Below, one piece after another: positions 739 to 22,121 of a stretch of 64,000 bases of DNA. The stretch's first letter is position 1. Every line of letters starts with the position of its first letter. Location: positions 186,001-250,000 of the IMG/VR virus record IMGVR_UViG_3300025133_009608; one strand, given 5' to 3'. The position numbers and the translations under genes were made by a program. A model generated the notes under the pieces. It made no database searches. It had not been told where the DNA came from and saw only the letters and a list, made by a program, of their open reading frames with translations.

Positions 739-746
739 TATGGGAG

Positions 747-1870: not shown

Positions 1871-1876
1871 ATTTGT

Positions 1877-2939: not shown

Positions 2940-2972
2940 AGATGAGGGTGGAACGCCTGCCCACCCTCATCT
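2940..2972 (-). terminator. Hairpin after 2986..3582
   Basis: AGATGAGGGTGG/CCACCCTCATCT stem. Confidence 0.6.
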
Positions 2973-2985
2973 ATCTCCATGCAGA

Positions 2986-3582
2986 CTAAGCCACGGATAC
3001 CTTGACCTGAATCCCCGCCAGCGTGGATACCATCTCCTCGGTCGGAGCGGCAGTAGGTGACCCAGGATGCCATGTCCAGACCATCTGGCCGCTATCGCCA
3101 GGGCCGATGATCACAAAGGCATGATCGGTTTCGGGCAGATCGGATTCAACGCCGTCAAGCACGATCTCCATTGTCGGAATCTCCTCCCCGTTTAGCTTAT
3201 GACTATGCAGTGATCGTCTAACGGAAAGCTGCGAGGAGGTAGATCCAGGGAGAATCTTGGAGAGAAGGCTTTGCAACGATACCACTCCAAGACGAGCCGT
3301 GTACTCCGCTGGAATATCCACCCTAACGTATGTACATGGGGAATATGTACTGCCAGGAAAGGAGGCCTCCATATCCTCATGGGATACGACAACGGCACTC
3401 GGCGCGGCAGCCGCAAAGAACTCGAACAGAGTGGCCTTATCGGTGACTCCCGCGACATAAGAGCCTCGACCCTTGCGCTGTTCGAGACCTTTGATGTGAT
3501 CATCTAAGGCTCCATCGGCCGCCGCAGTCGCGGCGGCGTAGGTGTTTTCCATGGCGGTTAGCATGATTTCAGAAGCGGTCAT
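2986..3582 (-). CDS. Hypothetical early protein
   Basis: 198-aa ORF with promoter variant at 3624-3645 and GAGGA RBS; C-terminal WTWHPG. Confidence 0.7.
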   Translation of the reverse strand: MTASEIMLTAMENTYAAATAAADGALDDHIKGLEQRKGRGSYVAGVTDKATLFEFFAAAAPSAVVVSHEDMEASFPGSTYSPCTYVRVDIPAEYTARLGVVSLQSLLSKILPGSTSSQLSVRRSLHSHKLNGEEIPTMEIVLDGVESDLPETDHAFVIIGPGDSGQMVWTWHPGSPTAAPTEEMVSTLAGIQVKVSVA

Positions 3583-3638
3583 TTTGTTCCTCGTTTGTTT
3601 TTTTGTTTCTCTCTACACCTAAGCGTAATGAATCGATC

Positions 3639-3902
3639 TTATTTATTAGACAACAGTACTCTCATAAGCCGCCGATAAGCCGCTGCCGCATTATTCTTGG
3701 CAAATGCGACGGCATCCTCGCCTCTACTGTCCTCAAGGCTCTGGGCCTCGCGCCCTGTCTCGCATTTTAGCTCTGCGAGGCTCATGCCGAGAAAAGGCTC
3801 GACATCGTTCAGCTCTCGTTCGAGCTGATCATATAGAGCGATAAGGTAGCCAAGTTGCCACTTCTTTTCGCGTAGCGGTGCTACCTTTGTCTTGGTGTTC
3901 AT
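3639..3902 (-). CDS. Hypothetical early protein
   Basis: Promoter at 3926-3947 and AAGGAG RBS. Confidence 0.65.
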   Translation of the reverse strand: MNTKTKVAPLREKKWQLGYLIALYDQLERELNDVEPFLGMSLAELKCETGREAQSLEDSRGEDAVAFAKNNAAAAYRRLMRVLLSNK

Positions 3903-3967
3903 TTTTCTATCTCCTTATGCTTTACTATAATAAATCGATCTTATTTATCGAACTTTTATCCCCCTTC

Positions 3968-5380: not shown

Positions 5381-5435
5381 TTCTATTCTCCCTTCATATC
5401 ACTATAATGAATCGATCTTATTTATCGAGGTAGCC

Positions 5436-5753
5436 TTATTGGCTTGTCACCCTCCAAACGCCATATGCCCAAACAGCTACGCCAAGAAACCCGCCGCCTC
5501 CGATGTGTGGACAGCTTATCCTCTCAAGCTCTCTCGTCTCATCTGGGTGTTCTGGAGGCAGCGAAGCAAGGTGCCATCTGGAATATGACTTTTGCTCGGC
5601 GCGCGAACCATTATAGCTATTCCACTTGGCCCCTGGGAGCTTGCGACCAGCAATCCCGACCGCATCATAGCAGCCCCCACAAACCTGAACCTCAACGGTT
5701 TCAACGATTATATTTTTATCTCCAACGATTTCTTCACCTTGCTTGTCGCCCAT
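5436..5753 (-). CDS. Hypothetical early protein
   Basis: Promoter at 5774-5795 and GAGG RBS. Confidence 0.55.
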   Translation of the reverse strand: MGDKQGEEIVGDKNIIVETVEVQVCGGCYDAVGIAGRKLPGAKWNSYNGSRAEQKSYSRWHLASLPPEHPDETRELERISCPHIGGGGFLGVAVWAYGVWRVTSQ

Positions 5754-6255
5754 GTTACCTCTCTTTACTTACCTATAATGAATCGATCTTATTTGCGGAA
5801 GTTATACCGTCATAGTCCAATGTCAGTCGCCCCGCCCTCTCGGCCCATCGGGGCGACCCCAAAACCCCCCATACTTTTGTTCCAAAGCCCAAACATCAAA
5901 TAAAAGTTTCCAACCCCTATAAGAAAAACGAAATAACAGCCCTCACGGTTCAACAGGGCACTCCACCAGCCCAACCAAATCATTTATTCCCACAGATAAA
6001 TAGAAGTATCGATAAGAATATCCCAATAACAATACATTTATCCAACACATCAATACATAAACGAACACCAAATAAACATAAGCCGTACACTAATAAACGT
6101 ATAGCGCACAGTAAATGTATTAGCGCACAACAAATAAACAAACGTGCAACGCAATACATAAAAGAATAAAAGAAATAAATACATATATGTATTGCAACTA
6201 TATGGTTATATGGCTTGACGGCCCACCAGCGGCGTGTTACGCGCGGCGCGCACCA

Positions 6256-8451: not shown

Positions 8452-9054
8452 TCAGCTTCTTTTGGCAATAAGATTGAGGTTCCTTACTCCCTTCTGGCTC
8501 CATATACACCCGGAGGCCGCGTCCCATGGATAATACCAGTTGTACTCCATCCTCATGCTCGGCAAATATGGGCAAATTTCTATTCCAGAATATTCCGTGG
8601 CAACTTCTTTCCAGTCTATTGGGTTGTGGTGATCCCCTCTTTTTATAGGGACAGAGAAGTGCCAGTAAAAGGTTTTCAGGTCATCTTCATTCGCAATGCG
8701 CAATACAGATTCTGATAACTCTAGTTCGTAAATATAATTTATCTTTTCTCTATACTTAGAAAGCCCCGACTCTGCGAACTCCAGCCACTCTGTTCCGCAT
8801 CCGTACCAAAGGCCGTTTGGCTTCGCAAAGACCACTGGAGAGGAGGGCTGATCAGACTCTGAAATTCTGACTATCTCACTTCTAGATAAAATTATTTTAG
8901 AATACGAGGACAGGTCAACTCCGAACATCGAAGCTTCGCCCTCTTCCGAGGTGGATCCGGACTTGCGGATCGATATGAGTGGAGCCGCGGCCTGTATGGG
9001 TCCGGCTTCGATGACCGCCCTGTGCAGATTGGCTATTTTATTAAAACGACTCAT
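8452..9054 (-). CDS. Conserved viral hypothetical protein with N-terminal tag
   Basis: KPNGLW...IDW...YSGIEI...WDAASGCIW pattern. Confidence 0.65.
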   Translation of the reverse strand: MSRFNKIANLHRAVIEAGPIQAAAPLISIRKSGSTSEEGEASMFGVDLSSYSKIILSRSEIVRISESDQPSSPVVFAKPNGLWYGCGTEWLEFAESGLSKYREKINYIYELELSESVLRIANEDDLKTFYWHFSVPIKRGDHHNPIDWKEVATEYSGIEICPYLPSMRMEYNWYYPWDAASGCIWSQKGVRNLNLIAKRS

Positions 9055-9119: not shown

Positions 9120-9764
9120 TTATGAGTCAATCAGGTCATGCGGTCCCGGTTGTCTTCCGTAGGGTCCATCAAGCCATCGCCTGTCGCTCCGCGCAGGCAC
9201 TCTTTCCATTGCTTTAAGTTCTGCGTGCCAGTCTTCAACAACTGGCTGCGCAGGCACTCTTTCCATTGCTATATCAACCGGCTCGATACGTTCCTCGAAG
9301 CTGACCGGCTCAGAATGGAGTCTTTCGTATTCTCTTCTCCCATTGGCAAGTCCCCTATTCCATATGCTTAATAGCTCTGAGTCCCTCCTTAGTCTCGGCG
9401 AGGCTTTGGGTCGAACACCACCGGCAGCAGCCCTGAACGCATAAAGATAATGCCCAAGCTGGCGGCCCTCTAGTCCTATATGTGGATCGTATGGAAGCGC
9501 CGCCAGGGCTTGGGCCGAGTACATATGCCTCCCGCCCCTGGGACTGGGAGTTATGTTTGTCATATCGACTCGGTCCCAACCCTCCTCGTAAAGTTCTTGC
9601 TCCTCCCCGTATTCATCGTCCCGACGAGAGTCCTCATCCCACAGCCCATCACTCGAACCGAAATCTTTAGTTGCTTTCTTTATAACCGCGTCCAAGTAAT
9701 CCGCTTCTTTCACAAGCCCCCTCTCGTCTAAATGGGTAGCTAATTTTATTAGTTCTATGATCAT
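9120..9764 (-). CDS. Hypothetical protein with N-terminal helical tag (likely start MIIEL at 9764)
   Basis: GGAG RBS; LIKLATHLDERGLVKEADYLDAVIKKA; internal 23-bp duplication at 9191-9213 and 9248-9270. Confidence 0.65.
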   Translation of the reverse strand: MIIELIKLATHLDERGLVKEADYLDAVIKKATKDFGSSDGLWDEDSRRDDEYGEEQELYEEGWDRVDMTNITPSPRGGRHMYSAQALAALPYDPHIGLEGRQLGHYLYAFRAAAGGVRPKASPRLRRDSELLSIWNRGLANGRREYERLHSEPVSFEERIEPVDIAMERVPAQPVVEDWHAELKAMERVPARSDRRWLDGPYGRQPGPHDLIDS

Positions 9765-9828
9765 CTCGCCTTCTCCGCTTAATTGTGCTATCTGGTGACT
9801 TATATTTAATAATATATATTGCAATATA

Positions 9829-10545: not shown

Positions 10546-10625
10546 TTGGATATTCTACTGTGCCGCACGAAGCTTTATGCGACTAATCTGTTTCCACCCT
10601 GGAAAAGCGAACATTGTGCCCGGCA

Positions 10626-11864
10626 CTACGCTAACGCCTCCCGCTCTGATGAGTTCAATACCCTGTGGCCAGAGGGAACGGAATTCATCAGAGCTGGCGC
10701 TCTGGATAGTTCCTGATCCGCATACGCGGCCCAGCCCGGCTCCTTTTGGGCGCGGCCTCCCCAGTGCTTTCTTGCGTACAATTCATTGAACGCCTCAGCC
10801 CCATTAGCTCTCGCCCTACGCGCGCCATTGACTGCGCCCATACCGCCATACCACCTCAGAGCAACTTCCCACCAGTTCCCTAGCTGCCCATAGTACTGGC
10901 AGAGCTTGTATCTAGCGACATGGTCTTGATTATGAGGAGTATTCTCGGCTCCCGCCTCAAGTCCGGACTGAGCAGCCCAAGTCGCCCAGTTGGATTCAAG
11001 GATTTGATACCGCCCCCTTGCCATTGTACCGCGGTTGAGAGCATTATAGTCGCCGCTACTCTCCTGTCCTGCAACTGCTTCCATAAACAATTCGAGCTCG
11101 CCCGACGGGCAACTGTGTGATGCCGGGTTTTCGAGCGGGGCCGCGGGCTGAGCCGCTTGCTGGTGTCTGTCTGCCGCAAGTGCAGCGCCCTCCAGCAGGC
11201 CGAGTAGATACACTTTTCTAGTTACTCCGAATCTAGGAACGTTTCCGAAATACTCATTATCATTTAGCTCCGCAATAAGACCATTGACCAAGCTCAGCAC
11301 ATCGGCATCAACGCCTCCAAAGGTAATGCCGTCCTCCAATCTTTGAATTATCTCTTTGACCTCTCTCCTTGCAGGCTCCCAGGGCTTTTGACTTCCGTCG
11401 GAATTCCACAAGATATCTCCCGCAGCGGTAAGAGGGCCGGCCATTCTCCCGGGAGCTTCAGGTGCTGGTTCAGGTGCTGGTTCAGGTGCTGGTTCAGGTG
11501 CTGGCTCAGGTGCTGGCTCAGGGGCTGGCAGAGTATCATTGCCGGAAAGGGGGAAGTTATCCCACAGGTCCTGAACACTTTTTAATCTTTTATAAGCACG
11601 CGTTCCCTCTCCGTATGTTCTTCCGATCCCATTTCCGCTCTTTGTTCGAAGAACCTCAAATGTATCCGATTCATAGTAGTACCTGAAGGCATAAGGCTTA
11701 TGCCCGTTTCCATTAGATCTTGGCTGCCAGAAGTCTATGTAATCAGCACTTGCCATTCGGATAATTAAATCCGCCTCTAGCGTGTTACCACTTCTTCTTA
11801 AATGTTTTGCTAAAATATTAATTTTTCTTTTAATAATATAATTCATGATACTAATTCTGCCCAT
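10626..11864 (-). CDS. Tagged modular protein with C-terminal lysozyme-like/transglycosylase domain
   Basis: QESSGDYNALN...ARGRYQI...W...QD; PAPE linker; N-half paralogous to 19169..20404. Confidence 0.7.
   Translation of the reverse strand: MGRISIMNYIIKRKINILAKHLRRSGNTLEADLIIRMASADYIDFWQPRSNGNGHKPYAFRYYYESDTFEVLRTKSGNGIGRTYGEGTRAYKRLKSVQDLWDNFPLSGNDTLPAPEPAPEPAPEPAPEPAPEPAPEAPGRMAGPLTAAGDILWNSDGSQKPWEPARREVKEIIQRLEDGITFGGVDADVLSLVNGLIAELNDNEYFGNVPRFGVTRKVYLLGLLEGAALAADRHQQAAQPAAPLENPASHSCPSGELELFMEAVAGQESSGDYNALNRGTMARGRYQILESNWATWAAQSGLEAGAENTPHNQDHVARYKLCQYYGQLGNWWEVALRWYGGMGAVNGARRARANGAEAFNELYARKHWGGRAQKEPGWAAYADQELSRAPALMNSVPSGHRVLNSSEREALA
11457..11528. repeat. 12-bp tandem repeat x6 encoding a (PAPE)n linker
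   Basis: (T/C)TCAGGTGCTGG units. Confidence 0.9.
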
Positions 11865-11957
11865 TCTGCGCCCGCATGGATGATATGTTGCTATTATACT
11901 AGAATAATTAGCAGGGATTTTATTCTAAAATATAAATGAGCATAACCCTGATAATCA

Positions 11958-12710
11958 TTAATCTTCGATATCAAAAAATACGAACCCCCCAGGCCCCTCG
12001 CGGAGCCCAAGGTTGTGATAAGAAATATCACTTGCAAGGTCTAGATCTAAAAGAAGAAGATAGTCCTCTACGAGGCGATGCACCCAGTCTTTCGTCAGGC
12101 TGCCAGATAAATGTTCGTTTATCACTCCAACGCTAGAGGCGGCAATGTCGTCATTTAAAATAAAATTCACAACTTCGTTAGTAATCAGCAGGTCATCTAT
12201 ATACATTAATTGCGATATTTTCTCTGGAATTAATCCAAAATTACTATCTATCAAAAAATCTATTGATGAAAAAAGCTTACTAGACTCATCCTGGCTCAGT
12301 CCAATGGAGTATGTGGTTTCATTTTTTAACAATTCCATAAATCTATATTTGAACATGTATCCGGGAAAAGTCGAGCCACTTAGAGACCCCTCGGAATACA
12401 CTCTAAGCCCATTTCCTGCAATTCTTGGGAGTGCGATATTGTCGCCTGAGCGACAGACTCCCGGGGTCTTATGGGCACTTATTTTGAGGGCAATAGACCC
12501 AACTCTATATACGATCCCAGAGGTTCCCGAGCCAATCTCGGCCGGAGCCTCTGAGAATGAAGATAAGAATGAAATATTATCTATAATAAAACTTTTTGTA
12601 TTCCACCATACATTTCCAATCCACTCATGGCATTCGACCTCAGAGAGTGGCCTGAAAGACTGATTGATGCAAACGTTTTTTTCAAGCATTAGGCTGCCCT
12701 TGGGCTTCAA
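11958..12710 (-). CDS. Protein-kinase-like protein
   Basis: IGSGTSGIVY Gly-loop, ALK lysine, DISYHN catalytic loop, FFD. Confidence 0.6.
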   Translation of the reverse strand: MKPKGSLMLEKNVCINQSFRPLSEVECHEWIGNVWWNTKSFIIDNISFLSSFSEAPAEIGSGTSGIVYRVGSIALKISAHKTPGVCRSGDNIALPRIAGNGLRVYSEGSLSGSTFPGYMFKYRFMELLKNETTYSIGLSQDESSKLFSSIDFLIDSNFGLIPEKISQLMYIDDLLITNEVVNFILNDDIAASSVGVINEHLSGSLTKDWVHRLVEDYLLLLDLDLASDISYHNLGLREGPGGFVFFDIED

Positions 12711-13145
12711 TTAAATATTATCGAGAAGCGCTGCGACTAGTCTTTTTCGTGCTCGCGGCCTAATCTTGCTTTTTTGCGCAATAGAACTAAGCTTTTTTAA
12801 AGAATTTTTTCTTGATTCTCTGGCCTCTGCAATCGGCTGAAATATAGGGAGAGGCAAGTCGCCTGGAGGCCCCATTTTTACAAGCTCCTTCTCATGCCCA
12901 AGCGCCGGCTTGGTAACTGGGTTGCCACCCTCATCTAGCAGCCCTTCCGTGTATCGGTCGAGAAATTGTTCTTTATCCCACTCTACCGTTTCTTCTTCGT
13001 GGTTTATGGTTAAGAGCCCAACTATAGAGTTGAGCTTGACCCTTGGCTCTTCAGGCCCGTCAATTATATCTTTAATGACCTCAATCACAATATCTTCCTG
13101 ACCCCTATCGACAGTCAGTTCTGACCATAAATTCTCTTTGCCCAT
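12711..13145 (-). CDS. Hypothetical protein
   Basis: 144-aa ORF with GGAGG RBS. Confidence 0.6.
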   Translation of the reverse strand: MGKENLWSELTVDRGQEDIVIEVIKDIIDGPEEPRVKLNSIVGLLTINHEEETVEWDKEQFLDRYTEGLLDEGGNPVTKPALGHEKELVKMGPPGDLPLPIFQPIAEARESRKNSLKKLSSIAQKSKIRPRARKRLVAALLDNI

Positions 13146-13189
13146 CCGAAAGCCTCCGCGCTTACGTTATTATAATATATTACTATTTT

Positions 13190-13918
13190 TTAGAGAGAAT
13201 CTAGGATTTCAGATACATTATCTATATCGTCCTTAAGAACAAAGGTTACCCAAACTATATCTTCTGTAAGCTGGGGAACTATAAACTCATTTACATCAAC
13301 GGCCATTACCAGCCCTACCAGCCTACCCCTGCGATCAAATACCCCAGAGCCGCTTGAGCCGGGCCACGCATACGAATTCATTATCGCCACCGTATTGCCC
13401 TGCTCAAAGCCGGTGATGACTCCGTATACAAAAAGCCTGTCGTGAAATGCGGGATATCCAGTATAAAAAACTCGCTCTCCCAGCAGATCGTCCAAATCAA
13501 GCCGAGTCCTGCGGAGGGTTACTGGAGATGTTCCTTCCATTTCTGGTATCAAAATTGCTGCAAAATCGCTTTCAGCATTTCTATATATAACAGAACCAAC
13601 TGTGGAGTCGCTCCCTCTGCCGTTTATAAGAAAAATATCAGAACCAGCAACAACGTGAGCTGCAGTTATAACAATATGATGATCACCTATAGCAAAATAC
13701 GTCCCAGACCCATGCCCCCGGTTCTCCATATCAATAACTTTTACTGCAGCATCTCTGCTTTTTGACTCTGCTCTAGACAGAGACGCCTGTTCCGCAGAGG
13801 CCGAGCCCACATTTTCTGCCGTCACGCTCTCTGCGAGTACTGCCTCTGCTCCGCAAATATGGAGGTAAGAGGCTATCGCTATAATTACCCCTATCGCTAT
13901 ATATATAAAATTTTTCAC
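13190..13918 (-). CDS. Trypsin-like (S1) serine protease with N-terminal TM/signal
   Basis: TAAHV, D, PGSSGSG catalytic triad motifs; GTG start overlaps the upstream stop. Confidence 0.85.
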   Translation of the reverse strand: MKNFIYIAIGVIIAIASYLHICGAEAVLAESVTAENVGSASAEQASLSRAESKSRDAAVKVIDMENRGHGSGTYFAIGDHHIVITAAHVVAGSDIFLINGRGSDSTVGSVIYRNAESDFAAILIPEMEGTSPVTLRRTRLDLDDLLGERVFYTGYPAFHDRLFVYGVITGFEQGNTVAIMNSYAWPGSSGSGVFDRRGRLVGLVMAVDVNEFIVPQLTEDIVWVTFVLKDDIDNVSEILDSL

Positions 13919-14244
13919 TATCCCACTACCTTCGTGTACCAAATCATCGCTGCCATCAGAAATTGTACTACCGCGAAGATCGTAACCGCCTTTGTCTTAA
14001 ATAGGTTAAGGTCAGAAACATGCTCGCTAAGCTCCTTTAGTTGAGTTGGAGATAAAACTTCGTCAATTTTTGATTTCCATATCCTTAGCTCATCGACCCT
14101 GTCTTCTTTCGCCTTTAGCTCTACAATTTCTTCTTTTAATTCTTGAATCTGCTTGTTCAGCGCTGCCATTCCATCAGACAGGCTACTGAGCTCATTAAGA
14201 ACAAGCCTCGAGTATTCTCCCCAGCCATTTTTATCCTCTGGCAT
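13918..14244 (-). CDS. Coiled-coil protein with C-terminal TM helix
   Basis: Heptad pattern and hydrophobic C-terminus; AGGAGGAG RBS. Confidence 0.6.
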   Translation of the reverse strand: MPEDKNGWGEYSRLVLNELSSLSDGMAALNKQIQELKEEIVELKAKEDRVDELRIWKSKIDEVLSPTQLKELSEHVSDLNLFKTKAVTIFAVVQFLMAAMIWYTKVVG

Positions 14245-14315
14245 AGCTCCTCCTTTAAATATTAGACTGCCTTTGTGTATTATGTAGTTATCAATAATAG
14301 TTATTAAAAATTGTG

Positions 14316-14882
14316 TTATTGATTTCTAGTGTCTTCTATGAGCATTCTTATATATTCTGAGCCAAACCCTTTCAGGGAAGCGTTTAGTGTCATATCTTTT
14401 GTTATAAAAAAGAATGTCGGCCAGGACGTAAGCGGCCATGCTTCAGTTCCTATTAGGTCGCGACTTCCCGCAAGAACCGGGGCAGATGTTATTCCAAATC
14501 TATCCGCCCATTCTTTGCAGTCCTCTTCCGACGGGGGAAGCCCCTCGTCTGTTTCGATCAATATCGTTACATATACCAGATCACTATTTGCATCTTGGGT
14601 GCTCTGAACCTCTGCCGCTGCAGATTGGCATGGCGGACACCACTCTGCGCTAAAATCTAGTATTATAATCTTCCCAAAGTTGTCATAAAGGGAGAACAAA
14701 TCGCCATTTTGGTCTGCAAGCTCAACATTACAGGGGTGGTCCCCAATCTCCTGCGAGCAGCTGTCCCAAGTTATCGGAGAGGGGGGAGACGAGTCGCCAT
14801 TGTCCGATACAACTACGTTGCTCGGGCCGCAAGCCGTCATAAAAAAAATAAATGAAATAATAAATCTAAACATTAGTCGCAC
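14316..14882 (-). CDS. Thioredoxin-fold (TlpA/redoxin) lipoprotein
   Basis: DFSAEWCPPC, WPT; lipobox MTAC. Confidence 0.85.
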   Translation of the reverse strand: MRLMFRFIISFIFFMTACGPSNVVVSDNGDSSPPSPITWDSCSQEIGDHPCNVELADQNGDLFSLYDNFGKIIILDFSAEWCPPCQSAAAEVQSTQDANSDLVYVTILIETDEGLPPSEEDCKEWADRFGITSAPVLAGSRDLIGTEAWPLTSWPTFFFITKDMTLNASLKGFGSEYIRMLIEDTRNQ

Positions 14883-16477
14883 TCTCCTATTACTGCGTAG
14901 TTAATATCTATAGAGCTGCCGTCCGGCGGTGCGGAGCCGAATATAATACTGTTAATCGAGGAATCAAATATCCAGTCGGTAGAGGCAATTCCATCGACGG
15001 TAACCTCTATCGTTTCCTCTATTGGGGTCTTGGATAGGGCGAATATAATTCCGGCCAGAGAGTCCCTAGCCAGGCCCTCCATCGTTACGCTCCAATCATT
15101 TGCGCAAATTGACATTGATGTTCCGCCGAGATCCATCGTTACATCGTAGTATCCAGAGCCAAATTGTGCGCCGCCATTAGAGGTGCAGCCAGATGGATAG
15201 TCTCCGATTATAGAGTGTGCAACGATCATGCTTGATGATGTCTTCGTAGACAAAAGATGAGCGGAGTAATCCGATGAGGACATTGAAGAGCTAGACGCTG
15301 AGTGATCCGGCTCGTCCGATACATAAACTATAACCATTTTTGCGTCGGCCCTAAAAAATCCGGTCGAACTCCCCGTTGCGGCATCGCCCCCTGGAGACGT
15401 TGCAAGAAAAGACTCAAAAAGCCCCTTCTCCGTTGGGCTTCCTGAGTATCCAATTGTATCTACTTGGTCTTCAAAGTCAGATATGGGATCCGTTGATGCA
15501 GAGGTTATAATCGGCCCAACAAAGTCGGGGGAGTCCGTTGTTATAAGGGCCAGATGATAGTCCACCCCCGCCGCCGAGAATACGCTTATAAAGTTAGAAA
15601 AGTTATTCTTCAAGTTCGTCTGATTCGAACTCATTGAGCCGGAGTTATCCACAACAAATAATATGTCCACATTGACCAGGCCTTCTTGGGTAAAGCTATC
15701 AGTTATCCAATCTTTATACTCTCCAATGGCCTCATGTGCCGACTCCACTACCGGCGTTGCCGGATCATTGGAATCCACCTGGACATACGCCGAGTCACTG
15801 AGTCCATCTATTGGAATATAATCTATATCCAGAAAGATGTAATCTCCAGGAATAATAGTTATAGGAAGTGGGCCATATTCTCCGGTATAGTTTCCTAGAA
15901 AGAAATCATTCGGAATTGTTGCATAATATTGTAAATCGTAAATTATTAAATTAGAATTTCCAAGATTTCCTACTATAATTTCCAGCTGCTCTTCGCAGCC
16001 AAGATATACGCTTCCCATGTCATAATTTTCTGGGTCTATATATATCACCGGGGCATCGCCGGTTCCATCCAGAGTTATTTCGACTATTGGCTCGTCCATA
16101 TCGTTAGACGCAACGCTCAGGGTGTCAAGATTGGTCTCAAACGTCTGCGGAGAATATGTAATGATAACATCAAAAGAGCCTCCCGGCTCAATCTCGGCGG
16201 GCCCCAAGTAAGAAAAAGAAAACGTTGAAAAACTATTGCTTAGATACATATCATTAATGTCTAAGTTATCGTTTCCTATGTTTTTTATTGAGACTATGGC
16301 GTCTAAGGATTCGCTCCCCGCGCTCAAGGACCCGAAAGAATGCTCGGTCGGAGTGACTTCTATTTCTGGGGCAAGAATTCCCGGCTCAAGCTCTTCTACA
16401 ATTGGAGATATTTTATAATCACTACATCCGGCTATAGATGCGAGTAATAATATTTTATATAAAAACATCATAACCAA
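14873..16477 (-). CDS. Lipoprotein with Ig-like domains and a vWA domain
   Basis: Lipobox IAGC; two Ig-like repeats; DILFVVDNSGSM MIDAS; VSDEPD. Confidence 0.8.
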   Translation of the reverse strand: MVMMFLYKILLLASIAGCSDYKISPIVEELEPGILAPEIEVTPTEHSFGSLSAGSESLDAIVSIKNIGNDNLDINDMYLSNSFSTFSFSYLGPAEIEPGGSFDVIITYSPQTFETNLDTLSVASNDMDEPIVEITLDGTGDAPVIYIDPENYDMGSVYLGCEEQLEIIVGNLGNSNLIIYDLQYYATIPNDFFLGNYTGEYGPLPITIIPGDYIFLDIDYIPIDGLSDSAYVQVDSNDPATPVVESAHEAIGEYKDWITDSFTQEGLVNVDILFVVDNSGSMSSNQTNLKNNFSNFISVFSAAGVDYHLALITTDSPDFVGPIITSASTDPISDFEDQVDTIGYSGSPTEKGLFESFLATSPGGDAATGSSTGFFRADAKMVIVYVSDEPDHSASSSSMSSSDYSAHLLSTKTSSSMIVAHSIIGDYPSGCTSNGGAQFGSGYYDVTMDLGGTSMSICANDWSVTMEGLARDSLAGIIFALSKTPIEETIEVTVDGIASTDWIFDSSINSIIFGSAPPDGSSIDINYAVIGECD

Positions 16478-17336
16478 CCTCTATGTAGGATCCGTAATCT
16501 GGTGTAAAGTTAAAAATAACAGAATTAGATCCTTCTGAATACTCCCATCTATCCGTCTTTTCTCCATCTATATAGGCGACAATAGAGCTAATAACTGGGG
16601 CCGGATCAGACAGGGCTATGGAGTCGATTCGCTGCGTTAGGAACGACGACTCAGACAACCATACAGACCAGGCCTCTCCACATATATCTATTGCCGATTT
16701 TCCATATATATTTGCAATTTCTATATATTTATATCCGACATCATTTGAGAATGATGAAAAGCACAGGCTATTTTCAATTTGCGTGATGGAAACCACATCA
16801 TGTCGCGTCGACGGAGTTATGCTATACAGCCATTCGGAAAAAATACTTGCAGAGATTCCACTTTGCTCATCTTCATCCGATATTAAAAATAGTAACAAAT
16901 CAGACTCTTCCCTGATAAAGCCCGCTCCATCTTCAGATGTCAGAAAAGAATATGTAGCCATAAACCCGGCCTCTCCGTTCGCCGGAGGCAGCGTGCTCGG
17001 TGCTACTAACATGTCAATGGCGGATGAGCTGCTATCGTAAATTCCAGAAAATCCAAGATTCTGACCGTCTGCCGTTATAAAGCCAAAGTGGTACTCCGAG
17101 GTTAGCCCCTCTATATCGACTCGCAACTCTTCCATTCCAGTTCCGATACTATCAAAGTTGTCGGACATAGAGCCGGAAGTGTCAATGACCACAAGAATAT
17201 CTATTTTTCCAATCCTATCAATCTGCCTCACCGAGTCTACTACGACTCTGGTCTCTTTTCTGTCGGTCATGGCTATATCACTGCTGCATCCAGTCATAAG
17301 GATGAATAACGACAGTAATTTATTTACCAAGCTCAT
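16455..17336 (-). CDS. vWA-domain lipoprotein
   Basis: Lipobox MTGC; DILVVIDTSGSM; ISDEDEQS; paralogous to the C-half of the neighbouring gene. Confidence 0.8.
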   Translation of the reverse strand: MSLVNKLLSLFILMTGCSSDIAMTDRKETRVVVDSVRQIDRIGKIDILVVIDTSGSMSDNFDSIGTGMEELRVDIEGLTSEYHFGFITADGQNLGFSGIYDSSSSAIDMLVAPSTLPPANGEAGFMATYSFLTSEDGAGFIREESDLLLFLISDEDEQSGISASIFSEWLYSITPSTRHDVVSITQIENSLCFSSFSNDVGYKYIEIANIYGKSAIDICGEAWSVWLSESSFLTQRIDSIALSDPAPVISSIVAYIDGEKTDRWEYSEGSNSVIFNFTPDYGSYIEVGYDVFI

Positions 17337-17431
17337 TCTCCGCCTCCAAGCTGGGCTATCACAATCAGGATTACCAGTATATATAAAAATATTAACTGTT
17401 TTAAGCTGTGCGAAGAATTAGATGGCTGAAT

Positions 17432-18640
17432 TTATTCTATTTCATATTGCCCAACATCTATCACCACAAGGTCGCCTATATCTCCATGACTATTTTTTTC
17501 AATTCTTTGCATAATGTTATTTGCATGCAAGTCATTCCATAAGATTCCAGCGCTTTTTAGCTCCATTATCGCAGAAAACAAAGATCGAGTTTCTGGTGCA
17601 TATTCTTCAAAATATAAAAACCCCTCCTCTTGGCCATCGTATGACTCCCTTGGAGGGAAGACTCCGTCACGCGGCTTATTGTACTTTGGAAGAGGTCTTT
17701 TTGGAGATGAAAAATATTTATTTAATGATATTATGTAATGCTTTATAAAAATTTCCACCAAATCTTTGGACCCATAAAAATCTGAAAATGATGCCCGAAT
17801 ATTATTAGATATAAGTTCGGATTCAGAATGGACATCTTCTATAGATATCACTCCCTTGAATATATCAGACTCTAAATTCGTTGTCACAAATGATACCTTT
17901 GTTGCAAATTTCAAGAATGAAGCAATGCCATCCTGCTCTTCTTCTGTTTCGCTTGCGGACTTAACGACAGAAACCAGCGCATCGCCCATGGCTCTTATGA
18001 GGGCTTTGTGGATAAATTCTTCATCTTTCTTCTTATCGCTGGTCTTATCACTCCTTCCTCTTAAGAGGTTATTTATTTCCGCAGAATAGGGGCCTAGCTT
18101 TTCCATTATAATTACCGTTCCAAGGAGAGAGTGTGACCTTCCGGCTCTACTTTCAGAGCTGACCTTATTCATATCTATAATAGCTTTTATCTCTGGGAGG
18201 TGCCTTTTTGCATTTGCACTTATATTGGAGTTTTTTATCTTCCGCCAAACAGCGGGCTCCGGATCTGTTGTATCAACAATTTTTGCGATCGATGGGCCGT
18301 TTTGATATAACACTTCAAATATATCTCCATATTTTGACTTTATATGATGACCCTCTGTTGCGTTTACTCCGCCAATATATTTAATCGGAATTATGCCGTG
18401 CCCCCTTAGGCCTTCTTCCTTTGCTCTGATCGCCTCTTGGCGCCGCAATTGGGCCTGATAAATATCAGCTTCTCGCCTCGCCTCAGCTCGATCTCTTTGC
18501 TCTTGGGTTGGCTCTCTATAGGGAATTACACGAGTGGCGTCGATGCCAGCAGTCGCGATTAGCCAATATTTGTGAATTAACCCCGGGGTGAGAGCTTGCT
18601 TTAATAATTCTGATATTTTATTTATTCTAATTTTATTCAT
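17432..18640 (-). CDS. Protein-kinase-like protein with N-terminal tag
   Basis: IAKI, IIMEKL, DLHANNIM, VVIDVG. Confidence 0.7.
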   Translation of the reverse strand: MNKIRINKISELLKQALTPGLIHKYWLIATAGIDATRVIPYREPTQEQRDRAEARREADIYQAQLRRQEAIRAKEEGLRGHGIIPIKYIGGVNATEGHHIKSKYGDIFEVLYQNGPSIAKIVDTTDPEPAVWRKIKNSNISANAKRHLPEIKAIIDMNKVSSESRAGRSHSLLGTVIIMEKLGPYSAEINNLLRGRSDKTSDKKKDEEFIHKALIRAMGDALVSVVKSASETEEEQDGIASFLKFATKVSFVTTNLESDIFKGVISIEDVHSESELISNNIRASFSDFYGSKDLVEIFIKHYIISLNKYFSSPKRPLPKYNKPRDGVFPPRESYDGQEEGFLYFEEYAPETRSLFSAIMELKSAGILWNDLHANNIMQRIEKNSHGDIGDLVVIDVGQYEIE

Positions 18641-18682
18641 GATTTTGTAGATTATTTTACTAAAGGCCGCAACTATGTTCTC

Positions 18683-18696
18683 AACTATTAATAGTT
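18683..18696. promoter_or_regulatory. Palindromic putative late-promoter motif between divergent genes
   Basis: AACTATTAATAGTT is a perfect palindrome giving CTATTAAT on both strands. Confidence 0.45.
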
Positions 18697-18738
18697 AATA
18701 ATAAACTATAATAACCCATTAAATCCTGGAGAAAGAAA

Positions 18739-19152
18739 ATGGCAGTAACAATTCAAACGCTTAGAGATGCAGAACTTGACGCTACAATAAAAATAGTCTG
18801 TGATGGCGATGGAGATGGCGGAACGACGATAAATATATCTGACCTAAGTGGCGCAGAGGATGACGGAACTGACAGGGTCAGCATATCAAGAATGATGCTA
18901 ACGGCAAACGGCTCCGTATCGATAGAGTGGGATGCCGATAGTGGCGTGCTCGCGGCCCAGCTAACCTCGGGGCAGACCGATTGGACAATGACCCTGCCGA
19001 ATAATGCTGGGGCGGGAGTTACCGGAGATCTTATTGTTACCTCTGGAGATGCAATCACTCACTTTACGATGATCTTGTTCCTAAAGAAGGTTGCCGGGTT
19101 CGAGGGGTCTGCGCTATCATACAGAAAAGTTATGCCACCACGTCGGGCATAG
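18739..19152 (+). CDS. Hypothetical, probably virion structural protein
   Basis: GGAG RBS; G/T/D-rich beta-type composition. Confidence 0.6.
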   Translation: MAVTIQTLRDAELDATIKIVCDGDGDGGTTINISDLSGAEDDGTDRVSISRMMLTANGSVSIEWDADSGVLAAQLTSGQTDWTMTLPNNAGAGVTGDLIVTSGDAITHFTMILFLKKVAGFEGSALSYRKVMPPRRA

Positions 19153-19168
19153 TGCTTGCCTTCGCGCG

Positions 19169-20404
19169 CTATACGGTCTCTGATCCTCCGCCACCTCTGG
19201 GGCCTTGCAGGAACGCAAGGCCGTCTTGGCTTACAGAGTTGATCTTTACGTGAACGTGTGGGTCGGGGCGCCGAGTTTCGTCCCCAATGCGTGCGTCGAC
19301 AAGCCCGCGCGAAACCGCCTCTCTTGCAACCTCAAGTGCTCCTGGGGTATTTCTAAGATCAAATGCAATACCGAGGGCGTGATTTGATATTGGATTGCTC
19401 TCTAAGTATATCGCAGCACAACTTACTGCTTCAGATCTGTCTTTTCCTTCGAAGCAATCCGCTATAGCGGCAGCGCCGACGTCATCCCTATAGAGGTCAA
19501 TGAGATAGGCCCGTCCTGCGCCATTCTCATCTCCTCCGTTATTTATATAATTGTGATACATTACGCCCGCCTGGTGGGCCGATCCCCGAAAGGCGGATGT
19601 CATAACCAGCGCTGGCATGCCCATTGTTCTTGCGAGGTTTGCCATTATATCCGCCGCATTTTTTGCATCCTCACTCAGTCCGCTATAGTTGATTCCGGCT
19701 TTTTGCTCAATTGGCTCGATTACCGCTGAGCTTTCCGTCTTCAGTATGGCACCCTCCAGGTGGCTCAATAGGTAGTCGCGCCTCGTCATATTTAGCCTGC
19801 GAACGTTCCCGTAATACCCGCGCCGTCCGAGAGCATCAACCAGCCCTCTCGCAAGGCTGAGGTCTTCGTGGGCGGCTCCTCTTTCTCTCCCGAACAATGT
19901 CCCATCATCAAGTCTCTGAATTAGTTCCATGACCTCTCTTCGGACCCCTGGCCACGGCCTCTGTGTCCCGTCACTTTCCCATAGAACTTGCTCAGCAGCT
20001 GTTATCGCTGGAGCTGCAACGGCACCCACTGGGGATGTCTCCTGCGGGACATCCGACGTGACAGTGGGTGCCGTTGCGCTGCCTCTTGGGGTCTCTTGGG
20101 ATTGCTCCCCCACCGGGTATAGAGCCCACTTGTCTTCGAGGCCTTTTAATATTCTATATACGGAAGTTCGAGGCCCAAATATCTTCCCGATGCCATTCCC
20201 CTCTTTGGTTTGCAAGACTTCGAATTCATCTCTGGAGTAGTGATACCTAAAGGCATAAGGCTTATACCTGGTGCCGTCTTCCGATGGCTCCCAGAAGTCA
20301 ATATAAGTGACGCTCGCCAGGCGGATGACAAGGCCCGACTCTTCAACGGCCCCTGCGGCCTCTAGGTATTCTGCCAAAGCATTTATTTTTTCTTTATAAT
20401 TCAT
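19169..20404 (-). CDS. Tagged modular protein with C-terminal M15-like Zn peptidase domain
   Basis: TSAFR...Q, SNHALGIAFDL, PHVHV (H-x6-D...HxH); N-half paralogous to 10626..11864. Confidence 0.7.
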   Translation of the reverse strand: MNYKEKINALAEYLEAAGAVEESGLVIRLASVTYIDFWEPSEDGTRYKPYAFRYHYSRDEFEVLQTKEGNGIGKIFGPRTSVYRILKGLEDKWALYPVGEQSQETPRGSATAPTVTSDVPQETSPVGAVAAPAITAAEQVLWESDGTQRPWPGVRREVMELIQRLDDGTLFGRERGAAHEDLSLARGLVDALGRRGYYGNVRRLNMTRRDYLLSHLEGAILKTESSAVIEPIEQKAGINYSGLSEDAKNAADIMANLARTMGMPALVMTSAFRGSAHQAGVMYHNYINNGGDENGAGRAYLIDLYRDDVGAAAIADCFEGKDRSEAVSCAAIYLESNPISNHALGIAFDLRNTPGALEVAREAVSRGLVDARIGDETRRPDPHVHVKINSVSQDGLAFLQGPRGGGGSETV

Positions 20405-20524
20405 AATTAAAAATACAACTCCATCATAGCCCGATACTATCTTTCTATATTTAGAAAATTAGCAGAAACACCCTGTGAGTAGATATTACGATTCCAAAGA
20501 TAATCATCTAGTAATTATTAAAAA

Positions 20525-20716
20525 TTAATCTCCACCATAAACGGCATAGAGATCTTCTTCATCTTCCTGTATTTTAATGGATTTTTTAAGATGTTTTATT
20601 TTTTCTTTTAGGCTAGAATTTTCTGCCTCTAGATCTAAAATATATTTCTTTAAACTATATATGGTGTCTTTATCGCTTTCCAATCTAGTTAGCATGCCGC
20701 CTCCTATCATATCCAT
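20525..20716 (-). CDS. Small coiled-coil protein
   Basis: Short ORF coupled to the upstream gene; GGAGG RBS. Confidence 0.5.
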   Translation of the reverse strand: MDMIGGGMLTRLESDKDTIYSLKKYILDLEAENSSLKEKIKHLKKSIKIQEDEEDLYAVYGGD

Positions 20717-21282
20717 ATAACATTAGCAAATTGCCATAATGTGTCAAAGAAGTTTTCAATTATTTCAATATCTTCGCTGATATTGGTCGAACCCTTCGGG
20801 GCCAGAATAATCTTATCATTTCCTATTGGCGGCGATTTTTGCTTCCCCTCAATTTTTGTTTTTTCTTTCCATATTTTTTCATCTGGATTTACGGGAACAT
20901 ATCCTATCGGCACAAGATCATGGCCAAAGCCAACTTCATCGATACCCTCTTTTGAGGCCGATGGTATAATTATTATATCCCACCCCATATCATCGGCGGG
21001 ATTATTCATCGTAACAACCTCTCCGTAATGAAAGGGGACTTCTAAATAAAAATCTTTTCCGAACCTCTTTTTTGTTCCAATCGGATTGTCCAGATATAAG
21101 GCCTGCCCGGGATTTTCGTTCAAATGAGTAATGGCGTTATCAATACCATCAATATCTATCTCCTCAACTGGGACGTTGATATTCGAAAATTTTATAAGGC
21201 AGGCTATTTTTTTTTGAGATGGCCGATTGTTTTTATCAAGCTCCCGGTATAATTTTAGCAAGATATTTTTTGGCATGATCAT
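20707..21282 (-). CDS. Inorganic-pyrophosphatase-like protein (divergent)
   Basis: VPFHYG...PADDMGWDIII...NDKIILA...IENFF resembles family I PPase YPxNYG/DGDPxD/DxKIIA; start overlaps the upstream stop (ATGA). Confidence 0.5.
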   Translation of the reverse strand: MIMPKNILLKLYRELDKNNRPSQKKIACLIKFSNINVPVEEIDIDGIDNAITHLNENPGQALYLDNPIGTKKRFGKDFYLEVPFHYGEVVTMNNPADDMGWDIIIIPSASKEGIDEVGFGHDLVPIGYVPVNPDEKIWKEKTKIEGKQKSPPIGNDKIILAPKGSTNISEDIEIIENFFDTLWQFANVIWI

Positions 21283-21524
21283 TCCTTGTGGATTCTTAGC
21301 CAACAGCTTAGGACTCTTTCTATTTCTTTTTTTACTTCGCATTTACCTTCGGAGCTGCAGTCAAATAATAGGTGTCTTATTTCTCTCTTTAATCGAAGAG
21401 CTTCGCGTCCCTTCTTTCTTTTGTCTTTTATTTTTGATATATCTTCCCATAAGATTTCGATCTTATCTAGTAATTGTGCAAGATCACGCCTTGTTTTTAT
21501 TTCTGTTCTAATAAAAAATTGCAT
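21279..21524 (-). CDS. Hypothetical basic protein
   Basis: ORF coupled to the downstream gene. Confidence 0.5.
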   Translation of the reverse strand: MQFFIRTEIKTRRDLAQLLDKIEILWEDISKIKDKRKKGREALRLKREIRHLLFDCSSEGKCEVKKEIERVLSCWLRIHKE

Positions 21525-21608
21525 AAGATTAACCCATCATTATCATAATGATATAATAGTAAAACATCAACCAGGATGGTGCTCAAGAGTATTATCTGAC
21601 TAATATTT

Positions 21609-22121
21609 TTGTATATTTATGAAAATATAACATGGAATGTTAAATTAATGCTAGAAGAAAAAACAATCAGAGGAATGAACGGAGAGGAATTTTCATATGA
21701 TGAATTCCTAAAAATAGTAAAAGACCTCGATGAAAATGGCTATTCGACTTATGTTGGAACCGATTCTCAAAAGTTTAAAGACAAAGTGTCAATGGTTAGT
21801 TGTGTCTGCCTGTACAGGCAAAGCGTTGGCTCTAAGATATTTTATATTAAAGAAAATATGAAAAAAGAAATAATTCCAACCTTGCGCTCAAGAATATTAT
21901 ATGAAGCTTATCGCAGCATAGAGATTGCGTTAGAGATGGATAGAATAATATATGGAGAACTAATTGTCCACCTGGATGTGGGCGCTGATGCTATAAAAAA
22001 TAAAACCGCCCGGTTTGAAAAAGAACTACAAATACTGGTTAGGTCTCAAGGGTTCGGCTGCGAGATAAAGCCAAATAGCTGGGCGAGTAGCAGCATAGCG
22101 GATAGATTTACAAAGAGCTAA
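21609..22121 (+). CDS. YkuK/DUF458 RNase H-like protein
   Basis: YVGTDSQ, RILYEAYRS, VHLDVG, KPNSWASSSIAD. Confidence 0.85.
   Translation: MYIYENITWNVKLMLEEKTIRGMNGEEFSYDEFLKIVKDLDENGYSTYVGTDSQKFKDKVSMVSCVCLYRQSVGSKIFYIKENMKKEIIPTLRSRILYEAYRSIEIALEMDRIIYGELIVHLDVGADAIKNKTARFEKELQILVRSQGFGCEIKPNSWASSSIADRFTKS

What the first reader, a model, noticed from the sequence alone, without database searches (positions are those of the whole stretch)
10626..20404. Paralogous carrier proteins with swapped peptidoglycan-hydrolase domains
Seen: 10626..11864 and 19169..20404 share the tag, domain 1 (YIDFW.P...KPYAFRY.Y..D.FEVL.TK.GNGIG), a variable low-complexity linker and domain 2 (LW.SDG.Q.PW...RREV.E.IQRL.DG...Y.GNV.R...TR..YLL..LEGA.L). 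They then diverge: a lysozyme-like glycosidase versus an M15-like Zn peptidase. Inference: a polymorphic effector architecture, with a common uncharacterised carrier and complementary wall-cutting activities, probably for DNA entry.
Basis: partly seen in the sequence, partly recalled or inferred. Interest (0 to 1): 0.7.

Follow-up and report, generated by a model that had tools for sequence, protein, structure and literature searches.

The report
Swappable wall-cutting enzymes on a phage carrier
Two genes of an uncultured giant marine phage share a previously undescribed N-terminal tag and carrier but end in different cell-wall-cutting enzymes, and related phages swap these enzyme heads (even for a phosphatase) between two fixed genome slots, which suggests a plug-in effector system, possibly delivered by the virus particle.

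Summary
ORF A (window 10626-11864, minus strand) and ORF B (19169-20404, minus strand) are 45% identical over about 229 N-terminal residues (E 2e-57) and unrelated after that. A ends in an SLT-type lytic transglycosylase. B ends in an LAS/M15-type zinc peptidase.

The window lies in a 317-kb uncultured myovirus whose head protein is nearest to that of Bacillus phage G. The carrier consists of a roughly 30-aa helical-hairpin tag, an orphan alpha/beta domain (D1), a disordered linker and an orphan three-helix bundle (D2).

The tag is a diverged member of a terminal peptide found on at least 14 other proteins in this genome and in many related giant-phage contigs, on very varied cargo. D1 is very rare: 7 hits among 1.84 billion representative proteins. 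Elsewhere D1 is fused to SLT or to Cys-X5-Arg phosphatase-like domains.

Synteny with two related phages shows two fixed slots flanking a conserved nine-gene cassette. Slot contents differ between phages. The ORF A unit is 90% identical across phages while the backbone is 70-79% identical. A 125-nt tract inside D1 is shared at 90-91% with a phosphatase gene.

The polymorphic-effector reading is therefore well supported. Virion delivery for DNA entry is plausible (structural-gene-type promoter motif, no export signal, separate endolysin candidates) but not shown.

The parts
10626..11864 (-). ORF A: tag, D1, linker, D2, then an SLT-type lytic transglycosylase. The probable true start is Met7 at 11846.
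11748..11846 (-). ORF A diverged N-terminal tag (about 33 aa, helix-turn-helix hairpin)
   Evidence: aligns with the canonical tag family; helices 3-16 and 20-31 in the AF2 model of the paralog
11547..11747 (-). ORF A domain 1 (orphan small alpha/beta domain)
   Evidence: only 7 hits among 1.84e9 representatives
11650..11774 (-). 125-nt recombination tract spanning the tag end and D1 start. It is 90-91% identical to the phosphatase-bearing gene of a related phage, with flanks at about 45%.
11433..11546 (-). ORF A Pro/Ala/Glu-rich disordered linker
   Evidence: the equivalent stretch has pLDDT <50 in the model
11169..11432 (-). ORF A domain 2 (orphan three-helix bundle)
10641..11129 (-). ORF A SLT / lysozyme-like catalytic domain. 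The GQES motif lies at 11058-11069, with the putative catalytic Glu codon at 11061-11063.
   Evidence: GQES/EQES conserved in P0002 and P0003 and in the L048 ortholog
11893..11913 (-). Promoter-like element TGCTAAT-N8-TATAAT upstream of ORF A, of the class shared with structural genes
19169..20404 (-). ORF B: tag, D1, linker, D2, then an LAS/M15-type zinc peptidase
20312..20404 (-). ORF B diverged N-terminal tag
20111..20311 (-). ORF B domain 1
   Evidence: pLDDT 78-89
20006..20110 (-). ORF B disordered linker
   Evidence: pLDDT <50 for residues 100-131
19733..20005 (-). ORF B domain 2 (three-helix bundle)
19205..19711 (-). ORF B M15-like domain. Motifs: TSAFRG at 19583-19600, SNHALGIAFD (H-x6-D) at 19358-19387, HVHVK (H-x-H) at 19244-19258.
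20445..20464 (-). Promoter-like element TGCTAAT-N8-TATAGA upstream of ORF B
11958..19152 (.). Conserved nine-gene cassette between the two slots: lipoproteins with Ig/vWA domains, a thioredoxin-like lipoprotein, a trypsin-like protease and others. It is syntenic at 70-75% DNA identity in a related phage.
9120..9824 (-). Neighbouring gene with the canonical tag (true start Met21 at 9764), of unknown function

Best explanation
ORF A and ORF B are paralogous effector cartridges of an uncultured, phage-G-like marine jumbo myovirus. Each has a short N-terminal helical-hairpin tag, which is a diverged copy of a terminal peptide marking many proteins of this phage clade. After the tag come an orphan adaptor domain D1, a flexible linker, an orphan three-helix bundle D2 and a catalytic head. 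The head is a lytic transglycosylase that cuts the glycan strand in A, and an LAS/M15 zinc peptidase that cuts the peptide stem or cross-link in B. The two genes sit in two recombination-prone slots flanking a conserved envelope-directed cassette. Whole genes and heads are exchanged between slots and between phages by recombination in the shared carrier sequence. Inferred, not shown: the tag and carrier recruit the enzymes into a phage assembly, most likely the virion. From there the two complementary activities would open the peptidoglycan locally at the start of infection, alongside other tagged cargo.
For: Shown. Paralogy of the carrier. SLT identity: Pfam above cut-off, E-S motif, predicted fold. 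M15 identity: zinc-ligand motifs and predicted fold, conserved in paralog C. Tag family under protein-level selection: codon-position identity 0.70/0.82/0.50 against 0.27 for upstream DNA. Tag present in 17 loci of other large viral contigs, usually at Met1 and sometimes at the extreme C-terminus. D1 fused to SLT, M15 or phosphatase-like heads. Slot swapping and mosaic DNA. Indirect support for virion delivery. No signal peptide or TM segment in A, B or C. A T[AG]CTAAT promoter-like motif about 9-fold enriched in upstream regions, shared by A, B and C with the sheath, fibre-like and head-module genes, and distinct from the early promoter array. Separate conventional endolysin candidates: PG_binding_1+Amidase_2 and LysM+Hydrolase_2. 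A ClpP-type head maturation protease is encoded. Precedents exist for packaged and ejected proteins with N-terminal targeting propeptides in T4 and SPN3US (PMC10052503).
Against: There is no direct evidence of virion location. Late promoters also fit lysis genes. The tag also sits on an AdoMet decarboxylase and precedes a lipoprotein-like signal in one protein. Neither is an obvious capsid cargo, so the tag may target something other than the virion. The complex prediction of tag with major head protein gave no answer. Most tagged proteins are very acidic, unlike the basic T4 internal proteins (own knowledge). The M15 assignment is below the Pfam thresholds. Enzyme activities are untested.
Confidence: 0.45

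Rival explanations
1. A and B are accessory endolysins that act from within at lysis. The carrier would be a novel wall-binding or regulatory module, and the two activities would cooperate with the amidase endolysin after holin action.
For: Both heads are typical endolysin catalytic domains. Modular endolysins with an N-terminal binding domain and a C-terminal catalytic domain are known from jumbo phages (own knowledge: phiKZ gp144). The structural-gene-type promoter motif would also suit lysis genes. There is no export signal, as for holin-dependent endolysins.
Against: D1 also carries phosphatase-like heads, and the tag carries AdoMet decarboxylase and many acidic proteins, none of which need wall binding. 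D1 and D2 show no similarity to this phage's own LysM or PG_binding_1 domains or to any Pfam family. The genome already has two conventional endolysin-type genes with known binding domains.
Confidence: 0.2
2. The tag is a docking peptide for an intracellular phage assembly or hub rather than the virion, for example a factory, a chaperonin or protease complex, or tag-tag networks. A and B would be recruited there and act on the wall only after membrane damage, or together with the exported cassette proteins.
For: Tag cargo includes a metabolic enzyme. A protein with three internal tag modules exists, suggesting multivalent networking. The tag can be N- or C-terminal. The genome encodes two GroEL-like paralogs and a ClpP-like protease. 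A and B flank a cassette of exported envelope proteins.
Against: Cytoplasmic peptidoglycan hydrolases have no substrate without export or delivery from outside. No partner has been identified. The promoter motif is shared with structural genes.
Confidence: 0.2
3. The tag and carrier form a non-classical export or secretion signal that takes the enzymes to the periplasm during infection, for envelope remodelling or superinfection exclusion.
For: The genes neighbour lipoproteins, a thioredoxin-like protein and a protease that carry signal peptides. One tagged protein has a lipobox-like signal directly after the tag.
Against: The tag is amphipathic and charged, with no hydrophobic core. It also occurs at C-termini. 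Phosphatase and AdoMet decarboxylase cargo point to cytoplasmic targets. No secretion machinery was identified.
Confidence: 0.1

Closest known systems
T4 internal head proteins (IPI-III, Alt) with the capsid targeting sequence, and the ejection proteins and paralog families of phiKZ/SPN3US
   Same: Several otherwise unrelated proteins of one phage share a short N-terminal peptide. In the known systems, that peptide or propeptide directs them into the prohead, they are ejected with the DNA, and a prohead protease exists (PMC10052503). This phage encodes a ClpP-type maturation protease.
   Different: The tag here is about 30 aa and a predicted helical hairpin. It can be C-terminal or internally repeated, and it has no match in cultured phages. 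Packaging and cleavage are not shown. The cargo is mostly acidic.
Virion-associated peptidoglycan hydrolases (T7 gp16 N-terminal transglycosylase, phiKZ gp181, T4 gp5, T5 Pb2)
   Same: An SLT-type or metallopeptidase domain carried by a phage particle component to open the wall at entry (reviews PMC6116005 and PMC5380687, listed; details from own knowledge).
   Different: The known cases are domains of large structural proteins such as the core, tape measure or spike. Here they are about 400-aa stand-alone proteins with a dedicated tag and carrier, and interchangeable heads.
Modular endolysins (binding domain plus catalytic domain; domain shuffling)
   Same: A conserved N-terminal part with swapped catalytic domains, and two bond specificities.
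   Different: The N-terminal modules are not any known wall-binding domain. They are also fused to phosphatase-like heads.
Bacterial polymorphic toxin systems (conserved N-terminal trafficking part, variable C-terminal toxin cassettes, recombination-driven replacement)
   Same: Conserved carrier and variable enzymatic tips. Mosaic DNA with a short high-identity tract at the junction. The phosphatase heads give weak hits to the polymorphic-toxin DSP-PTPase family Tc-R-P.
   Different: This system is phage-encoded, with no secretion-system domain. No adjacent immunity gene was noticed in the conserved flanking genes, and none was searched for. The replaced units include whole genes with their promoters, moving between two fixed slots.
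Encapsulin cargo-loading peptides and the P22 scaffolding-protein helix-turn-helix coat-binding domain
   Same: Short terminal peptides, N- or C-terminal, that load diverse cargo into HK97-fold shells. The P22 module is a roughly 30-aa helical hairpin (own knowledge).
   Different: This is analogy only. No sequence relationship was tested, and the tag versus head-protein prediction gave no answer.

Membership tests
SLT / family-1 lytic transglycosylase (PF01464, lysozyme-like) | Profile match above the curated threshold | tested here: met
   ORF A 23.8 bits against cut-off 21.3; relative P0003 30.9 bits
SLT / family-1 lytic transglycosylase (PF01464, lysozyme-like) | Catalytic Glu in the E-S motif, followed by the G-x-Y/M-Q motif | tested here: met
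   GQES and YQI are present in A (window 11058-11069 and 11001-11009) and conserved in P0002 and P0003 and in the L048 ortholog
SLT / family-1 lytic transglycosylase (PF01464, lysozyme-like) | Lysozyme-like fold | tested here: met
   Atlas predicted-structure matches to SLT clusters, TM 0.58-0.68 over residues 246-408; predicted models only
SLT / family-1 lytic transglycosylase (PF01464, lysozyme-like) | Cleaves MurNAc-GlcNAc with 1,6-anhydro product | not testable with these tools
   Needs muropeptide analysis
LAS / M15 zinc metallopeptidase (VanY, Peptidase_M15_3, DUF5715) | Profile match above the curated threshold | tested here: not met
   VanY 15.7 bits against 25; paralog C Peptidase_M15_3 13.6 against 23.2; PDB profile hits to LdcB/DacB only at E about 1
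LAS / M15 zinc metallopeptidase (VanY, Peptidase_M15_3, DUF5715) | Zinc ligands H-x6-D and H-x-H (S-x-H-x-x-G-x-A-x-D motif) | tested here: met
   SNHALGIAFD 340-349 and HVHVK 383-387 in B, with the same motifs in paralog C
LAS / M15 zinc metallopeptidase (VanY, Peptidase_M15_3, DUF5715) | LAS fold | tested here: met
   Atlas structure matches with TM 0.52-0.73 to M15_3, VanY and DUF5715 clusters; feature score 0.95 to unnamed viral and bacterial clusters; predicted models only
Capsid-targeted internal/ejection proteins (T4 CTS type) | Short shared terminal peptide on several otherwise unrelated proteins of one phage | tested here: met
   At least 14 canonical plus 3 diverged tags in this genome
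Capsid-targeted internal/ejection proteins (T4 CTS type) | Physical presence in proheads or virions and removal of the peptide by the prohead protease | not testable with these tools
   A ClpP-type maturation protease gene exists. There is no proteomics. The tag versus head-protein prediction gave no answer.
Modular endolysin (cell-wall-binding domain plus catalytic domain) | N-terminal module is a recognised wall-binding domain | tested here: not met
   No Pfam hit for the tag, D1 or D2. hhalign against the phage's own PG_binding_1 and LysM gave probabilities of 0.2% and 1.5%. D1 is also fused to phosphatases.
Polymorphic toxin systems | Conserved N-terminal part with variable C-terminal enzymatic cassettes exchanged by recombination | tested here: met
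Polymorphic toxin systems | Secretion or trafficking domain of a known system and an adjacent immunity gene | tested here: not met
   No signal, TM or known trafficking domain. The neighbours are conserved cassette genes irrespective of the head. Immunity genes were not specifically searched for.
Cys-based (PTP/DSP) phosphatases, for the heads of P0004-P0006 | H-C-x5-R-(S/T) P-loop | tested here: met
   HCTHGADRTG, HCRWGADRTG and HCHHGADRTG. Pfam hits to DSPc, Y_phosphatase3 and Tc-R-P are all below their cut-offs.

The most novel reading that the evidence does not exclude
The roughly 30-aa terminal helical hairpin is a general cargo-loading peptide that defines the packaged and injected effector arsenal of a large clade of uncultured giant marine phages (phage-G-like head). 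The cargo would include wall hydrolases, phosphatases, a SAM decarboxylase and many acidic candidate anti-defence proteins. The D1-bearing genes would be hot-swappable enzyme cartridges exchanged between fixed genomic slots.
Probability: 0.3. Interest if true: 0.8.

Novelty: new variant of a known kind. Interest (0 to 1): 0.62.

Why it matters
If the tag is a targeting peptide, the delivered proteome of an abundant but uncultured clade of giant ocean phages could be read from sequence. At least 278 IMG/VR contigs share the head protein. It would also give a natural, modular way to load foreign cargo into very large capsids. The two-slot cartridge exchange is a clear example of polymorphic-toxin-style evolution in a virus. 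The carrier domains D1 and D2 have no detectable relatives and are new targets for structural and functional work. Paired glycan- and peptide-cutting enzymes are also of practical interest as enzybiotic parts.

Tried and rejected
- **Word-index search with the carrier.** It returned only the query and missed even paralog A, probably because linker words swamped it, so it is not informative. The same search with the M15 region found only paralog C.
- **Pattern scans for the carrier.** Scans of IMG/VR found nothing. The metagenome scan added only one truncated fragment.
- **tblastn against GenBank phages.** ORF B, a tagged protein and the bare tag all gave no match.
- **phmmer of both C-termini against PDB.** No hits. 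The B+C profile gave only E about 1 hits to LdcB and DacB.
- **Fold searches with the carrier model.** No significant match in PDB, BFVD, AFDB clusters or the Atlas. VIA-align matched D2 only to generic three-helix bundles at noise level.
- **Complex prediction of head protein with tag.** No answer, so it was not used as evidence.
- **Genome scans for S77 and S78 prohead proteases.** Negative, and the S77 control rang nowhere. The protease was found by PHROGs instead.
- **Genome scans for further SLT, M23 or lysozyme domains.** Negative, but the tool also missed ORF A's own weak SLT domain, so they are insensitive.
- **Tag as a repeated DNA or promoter cassette.** Rejected: third codon positions diverge and the upstream DNA is unrelated.
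- **Carrier as a known wall-binding domain.** Rejected.


Full report
**Context.** The window is bases 186001-250000 of a 316,664-bp IMG/VR virus record with no end repeats found, estimated 94% complete. Nearly all genes lie on the minus strand. The genome encodes a major head protein (phrog_2522), portal, large terminase and tail sheath. It also encodes a ClpP-type head maturation protease and two GroEL-like paralogs. The head protein is 51% identical to that of Bacillus phage G, the nearest cultured phage. It is 78-89% identical to the head proteins of 278 IMG/VR contigs. Relatives of the finding come from marine samples, including Tara Oceans. This is therefore an uncultured, phage-G-like giant myovirus. 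Lipobox signals in neighbouring genes suggest a diderm host (my inference).

**The observation.** ORF A (10626-11864, minus, 412 aa) and ORF B (19169-20404, minus, 411 aa) exist as described. They are 45% identical over 229 residues (E 2e-57) and show nothing in common afterwards. An 88%-identical ortholog and ORF B both begin MNY, so ORF A probably starts at Met7, window 11846.

**The heads.** The evidence for each C-terminal domain is as follows.
- ORF A residues 261-354 match Pfam SLT above the curated cut-off, 23.8 against 21.3 bits.
- ORF A's E-S motif (GQES) and the following YQI are conserved in all SLT-bearing relatives.
- The Atlas model of ORF A matches SLT clusters at TM 0.58-0.68.
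- ORF B's head is too diverged for Pfam: VanY at E 0.013.
- ORF B's only close relative is a third paralog, C, at genome 158351-159265, 61% identical.
- ORF B has the LAS/M15 signature S-x-H-x-x-G-x-A-x-D plus H-x-H.
- LdcB and DacB align on exactly these motifs, though without significance.
- ORF B's predicted structure matches M15_3, VanY and DUF5715 clusters at TM 0.52-0.73.

I accept both assignments. The M15 one rests on motifs and predicted fold, not on a significant profile score. Enzyme activity is untested.

**The carrier.** An AF2 model built from eight sequences has mean pLDDT 73.

| Segment | Residues (ORF B) | Prediction |
|---|---|---|
| Tag | 1-31 | helix-turn-helix hairpin |
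| D1 | 32-97 | three-stranded sheet plus two helices, pLDDT 78-89 |
| Linker | 100-131 | disordered |
| D2 | about 136-227 | three-helix bundle |

None of the three modules matches Pfam or PHROGs. None has a significant structural neighbour in PDB, BFVD, AFDB clusters or the Atlas. D2 resembles only generic helical bundles at Z about 8, within the tool's stated noise range. D2 and D1 do not resemble the PG_binding_1 and LysM domains found elsewhere in this window.

**The tag is a clade-wide feature.**
- An all-against-all comparison showed a roughly 30-aa N-terminal motif (consensus MIKELIKLANxLDERGLVKEADYLD) on many proteins.
- An HMM finds 14 strong members in this genome.
- A, B and C carry diverged copies that align in register.
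- The motif nearly always begins at the initiator Met. In one protein here and three elsewhere it forms the extreme C-terminus. One related protein contains three internal copies.
- Between copies, codon positions 1, 2 and 3 are 70%, 82% and 50% identical, and the upstream DNA is at background (27%). Selection therefore acts on the peptide, not on a DNA repeat.
- The tag occurs in 17 loci of 13 other large viral contigs, up to 372 kb. Some of these share the head protein.
- Tagged genes are often clustered.
- No cultured phage has the tag, and no database entry names it.

Cargo is diverse. It is mostly small, very acidic proteins of unknown function. One protein has a lipoprotein-like signal directly after the tag. 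In a related phage, one is an S-adenosylmethionine decarboxylase at 66 bits.

**D1 is rare and travels with different heads.** A profile of the carrier, searched exhaustively against 1.84 billion representative proteins, found seven proteins. Besides ORF B itself and an ORF-A-like fragment (P0002), the hits include:
- P0003: tag, D1, linker, SLT, with no D2.
- P0004 and P0005: diverged tag, D1, linker, then a domain with the H-C-x5-R-T P-loop of Cys-based phosphatases.
- P0006: canonical tag, acidic linker, D1, then the same kind of head.

The phosphatase Pfam hits are all below threshold, so that assignment rests on the motif. Paralog C carries the M15 head behind a diverged tag and a repetitive linker, with no D1 or D2. 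The modules therefore combine freely. D2 was seen only in the A/B lineage.

**Two slots and mobile cartridges.** A 14-kb contig of a related phage (L004/L048) is collinear with window 10580-21979. The nine genes between B and A are conserved at 55-88% protein identity and 70-75% DNA identity. The flank upstream of B is conserved at 79%.

| Phage | Slot 1 (ORF B position) | Slot 2 (ORF A position) |
|---|---|---|
| This phage | ORF B, M15 head | ORF A, SLT head |
| L048 | full ORF A ortholog, SLT head | P0004, phosphatase-like head |
| L129 | SLT-type gene | not on the contig |

Sources for the table are. In L048, the ORF A ortholog is 87-88% identical in protein. Its DNA is 90.4% identical including about 100 nt of upstream sequence. 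The cartridge is thus better conserved than its backbone, which points to recent exchange. Inside P0004, a 125-126-nt tract spanning the end of the tag and the start of D1 is 90-91% identical to ORF A, while both flanks are about 45% identical. I read that tract as a recombination or gene-conversion footprint in the shared carrier.

**Expression signals.** A near-invariant 25-bp element, ATAAATAAGATCGATT[CT]ATTATAG, occurs about 33 times. All copies lie within genome 160-192 kb, each before a small gene, which looks like an early promoter array. A and B lack it.

A different element is about 7- to 11-fold enriched in upstream regions: T[AG]CTAAT followed 6-10 nt later by a -10-like hexamer. 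It sits in front of the following genes:
- ORF A, ORF B and paralog C;
- two canonical-tag genes;
- the tail sheath gene;
- fibre-like genes;
- several head-module genes.

This suggests co-expression with structural genes. The timing itself is inferred.

**What it most likely does.** The following points are shown:
- a conserved tag and carrier with interchangeable enzymatic heads;
- two complementary wall-cutting specificities in one genome;
- exchange by recombination at fixed slots.

The function is inferred. A, B and C have no signal peptide or membrane segment, so they can reach peptidoglycan only from outside with the particle or after membrane permeabilisation. The phage has separate conventional endolysin-type genes with recognised binding domains. 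D1 and the tag also carry cargo that has no business at the wall.

Together with the structural-gene-type promoter motif, the maturation protease, and the precedent of packaged and ejected proteins with targeting propeptides in T4 and SPN3US (PMC10052503), I favour delivery by the virion. I put this at about 0.45. Several things keep the rivals alive: the AdoMet decarboxylase and lipoprotein-like cargo, the acidic nature of most tagged proteins, the C-terminal and repeated tags, and the absence of any identified receptor. The rivals are accessory endolysins, docking to an intracellular assembly, and non-classical export. The one complex prediction allowed (head protein with tag) gave no answer and is not counted.

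**Novelty.** Modular lysins, virion-associated hydrolases, capsid-targeting peptides and polymorphic toxin cassettes are each known. The following appear undescribed in the libraries searched:
- the specific tag;
- the orphan D1 and D2 modules;
- their combination with wall hydrolases and phosphatases;
- the two-slot cartridge exchange in a giant-phage clade.

I class this as a new variant of a known kind. It carries a real chance that the tag defines a new cargo-targeting system.

Noticed in passing
window 1-5790 (genome 160.3-191.8 kb): About 33 copies of a near-invariant 25-bp element, ATAAATAAGATCGATT[CT]ATTATAG, each 24-80 nt upstream of a small ORF. It looks like a dense array of phage-specific, presumably early, promoters in a region of higher GC.
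   Followed up: partly
window 8452-9054 (-); also genome 192983-193555, 252955-253314, 256564-259950: A second shared N-terminal motif, roughly M-x-R-F/S-x-K-I-x-x-L-H-K-x-A, on several otherwise different proteins, including one of 1128 aa. This may be another terminal tag family in the same phage. It was seen by eye only.
   Followed up: no
window 49272-50207 (-) and 32379-33002 (-): Conventional endolysin-type genes: PG_binding_1 + Amidase_2, and LysM + Hydrolase_2 (SleB-like). Counting A, B and C, this gives the phage five predicted peptidoglycan hydrolases.
   Followed up: partly
window 17432-18640 (-) and 11958-12710 (-): Two cassette proteins show protein-kinase-like motifs by eye: a Gly-rich loop with an ALK motif, and HxN...(I/F)D motifs near the C-terminus. 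Pfam found nothing at E <= 0.01. This is notable because the neighbouring slot holds a phosphatase-like head in a related phage.
   Followed up: no
genome 155144-155653 (-), outside the window (L037:15147-15623): A canonical tag is followed directly by a hydrophobic segment and a lipobox-like ASGC, so a tagged putative lipoprotein or membrane protein. Genome 112644-113450 has a diverged tag followed by a Gly/Ala-rich membrane-like region.
   Followed up: no
L048:11101-12087 (+): A 328-aa protein with three tag modules (residues about 1, 81 and 231), each preceded by a similar acidic spacer. The internal copies lack a Met, so this is a true tandem repeat.
   Followed up: partly
L005:9287-9961 (+): Tag fused to an S-adenosylmethionine decarboxylase domain (PF02675, 66 bits), immediately downstream of the tag-D1-phosphatase gene P0006. 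Five tagged ORFs lie within this 10-kb locus.
   Followed up: partly
window 10580-10624: The 45 nt just 3' of ORF A's stop are 93% identical to the end of the L048 locus, beyond the slot-2 genes there. This may be a conserved slot boundary.
   Followed up: no
window 11977-12012 (-): A strong terminator-like hairpin (11 pairs, 7 G-C) with a T-rich tail, just upstream of the point where homology to the mobile ORF A unit begins (11960) and inside the 3' end of the preceding ORF.
   Followed up: no
genome 158351-159265 (-), paralog C (L002:1474-2388): The linker of paralog C contains a direct peptide repeat (RYVPPEATSPW, twice) between the diverged tag and the M15 head.
   Followed up: no
genome 64668-66314 and 116808-118409: Two GroEL-like chaperonin paralogs, 37% identical, in one phage genome. 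The assignment is from N-terminal sequence and length only and was not checked against a family library.
   Followed up: no
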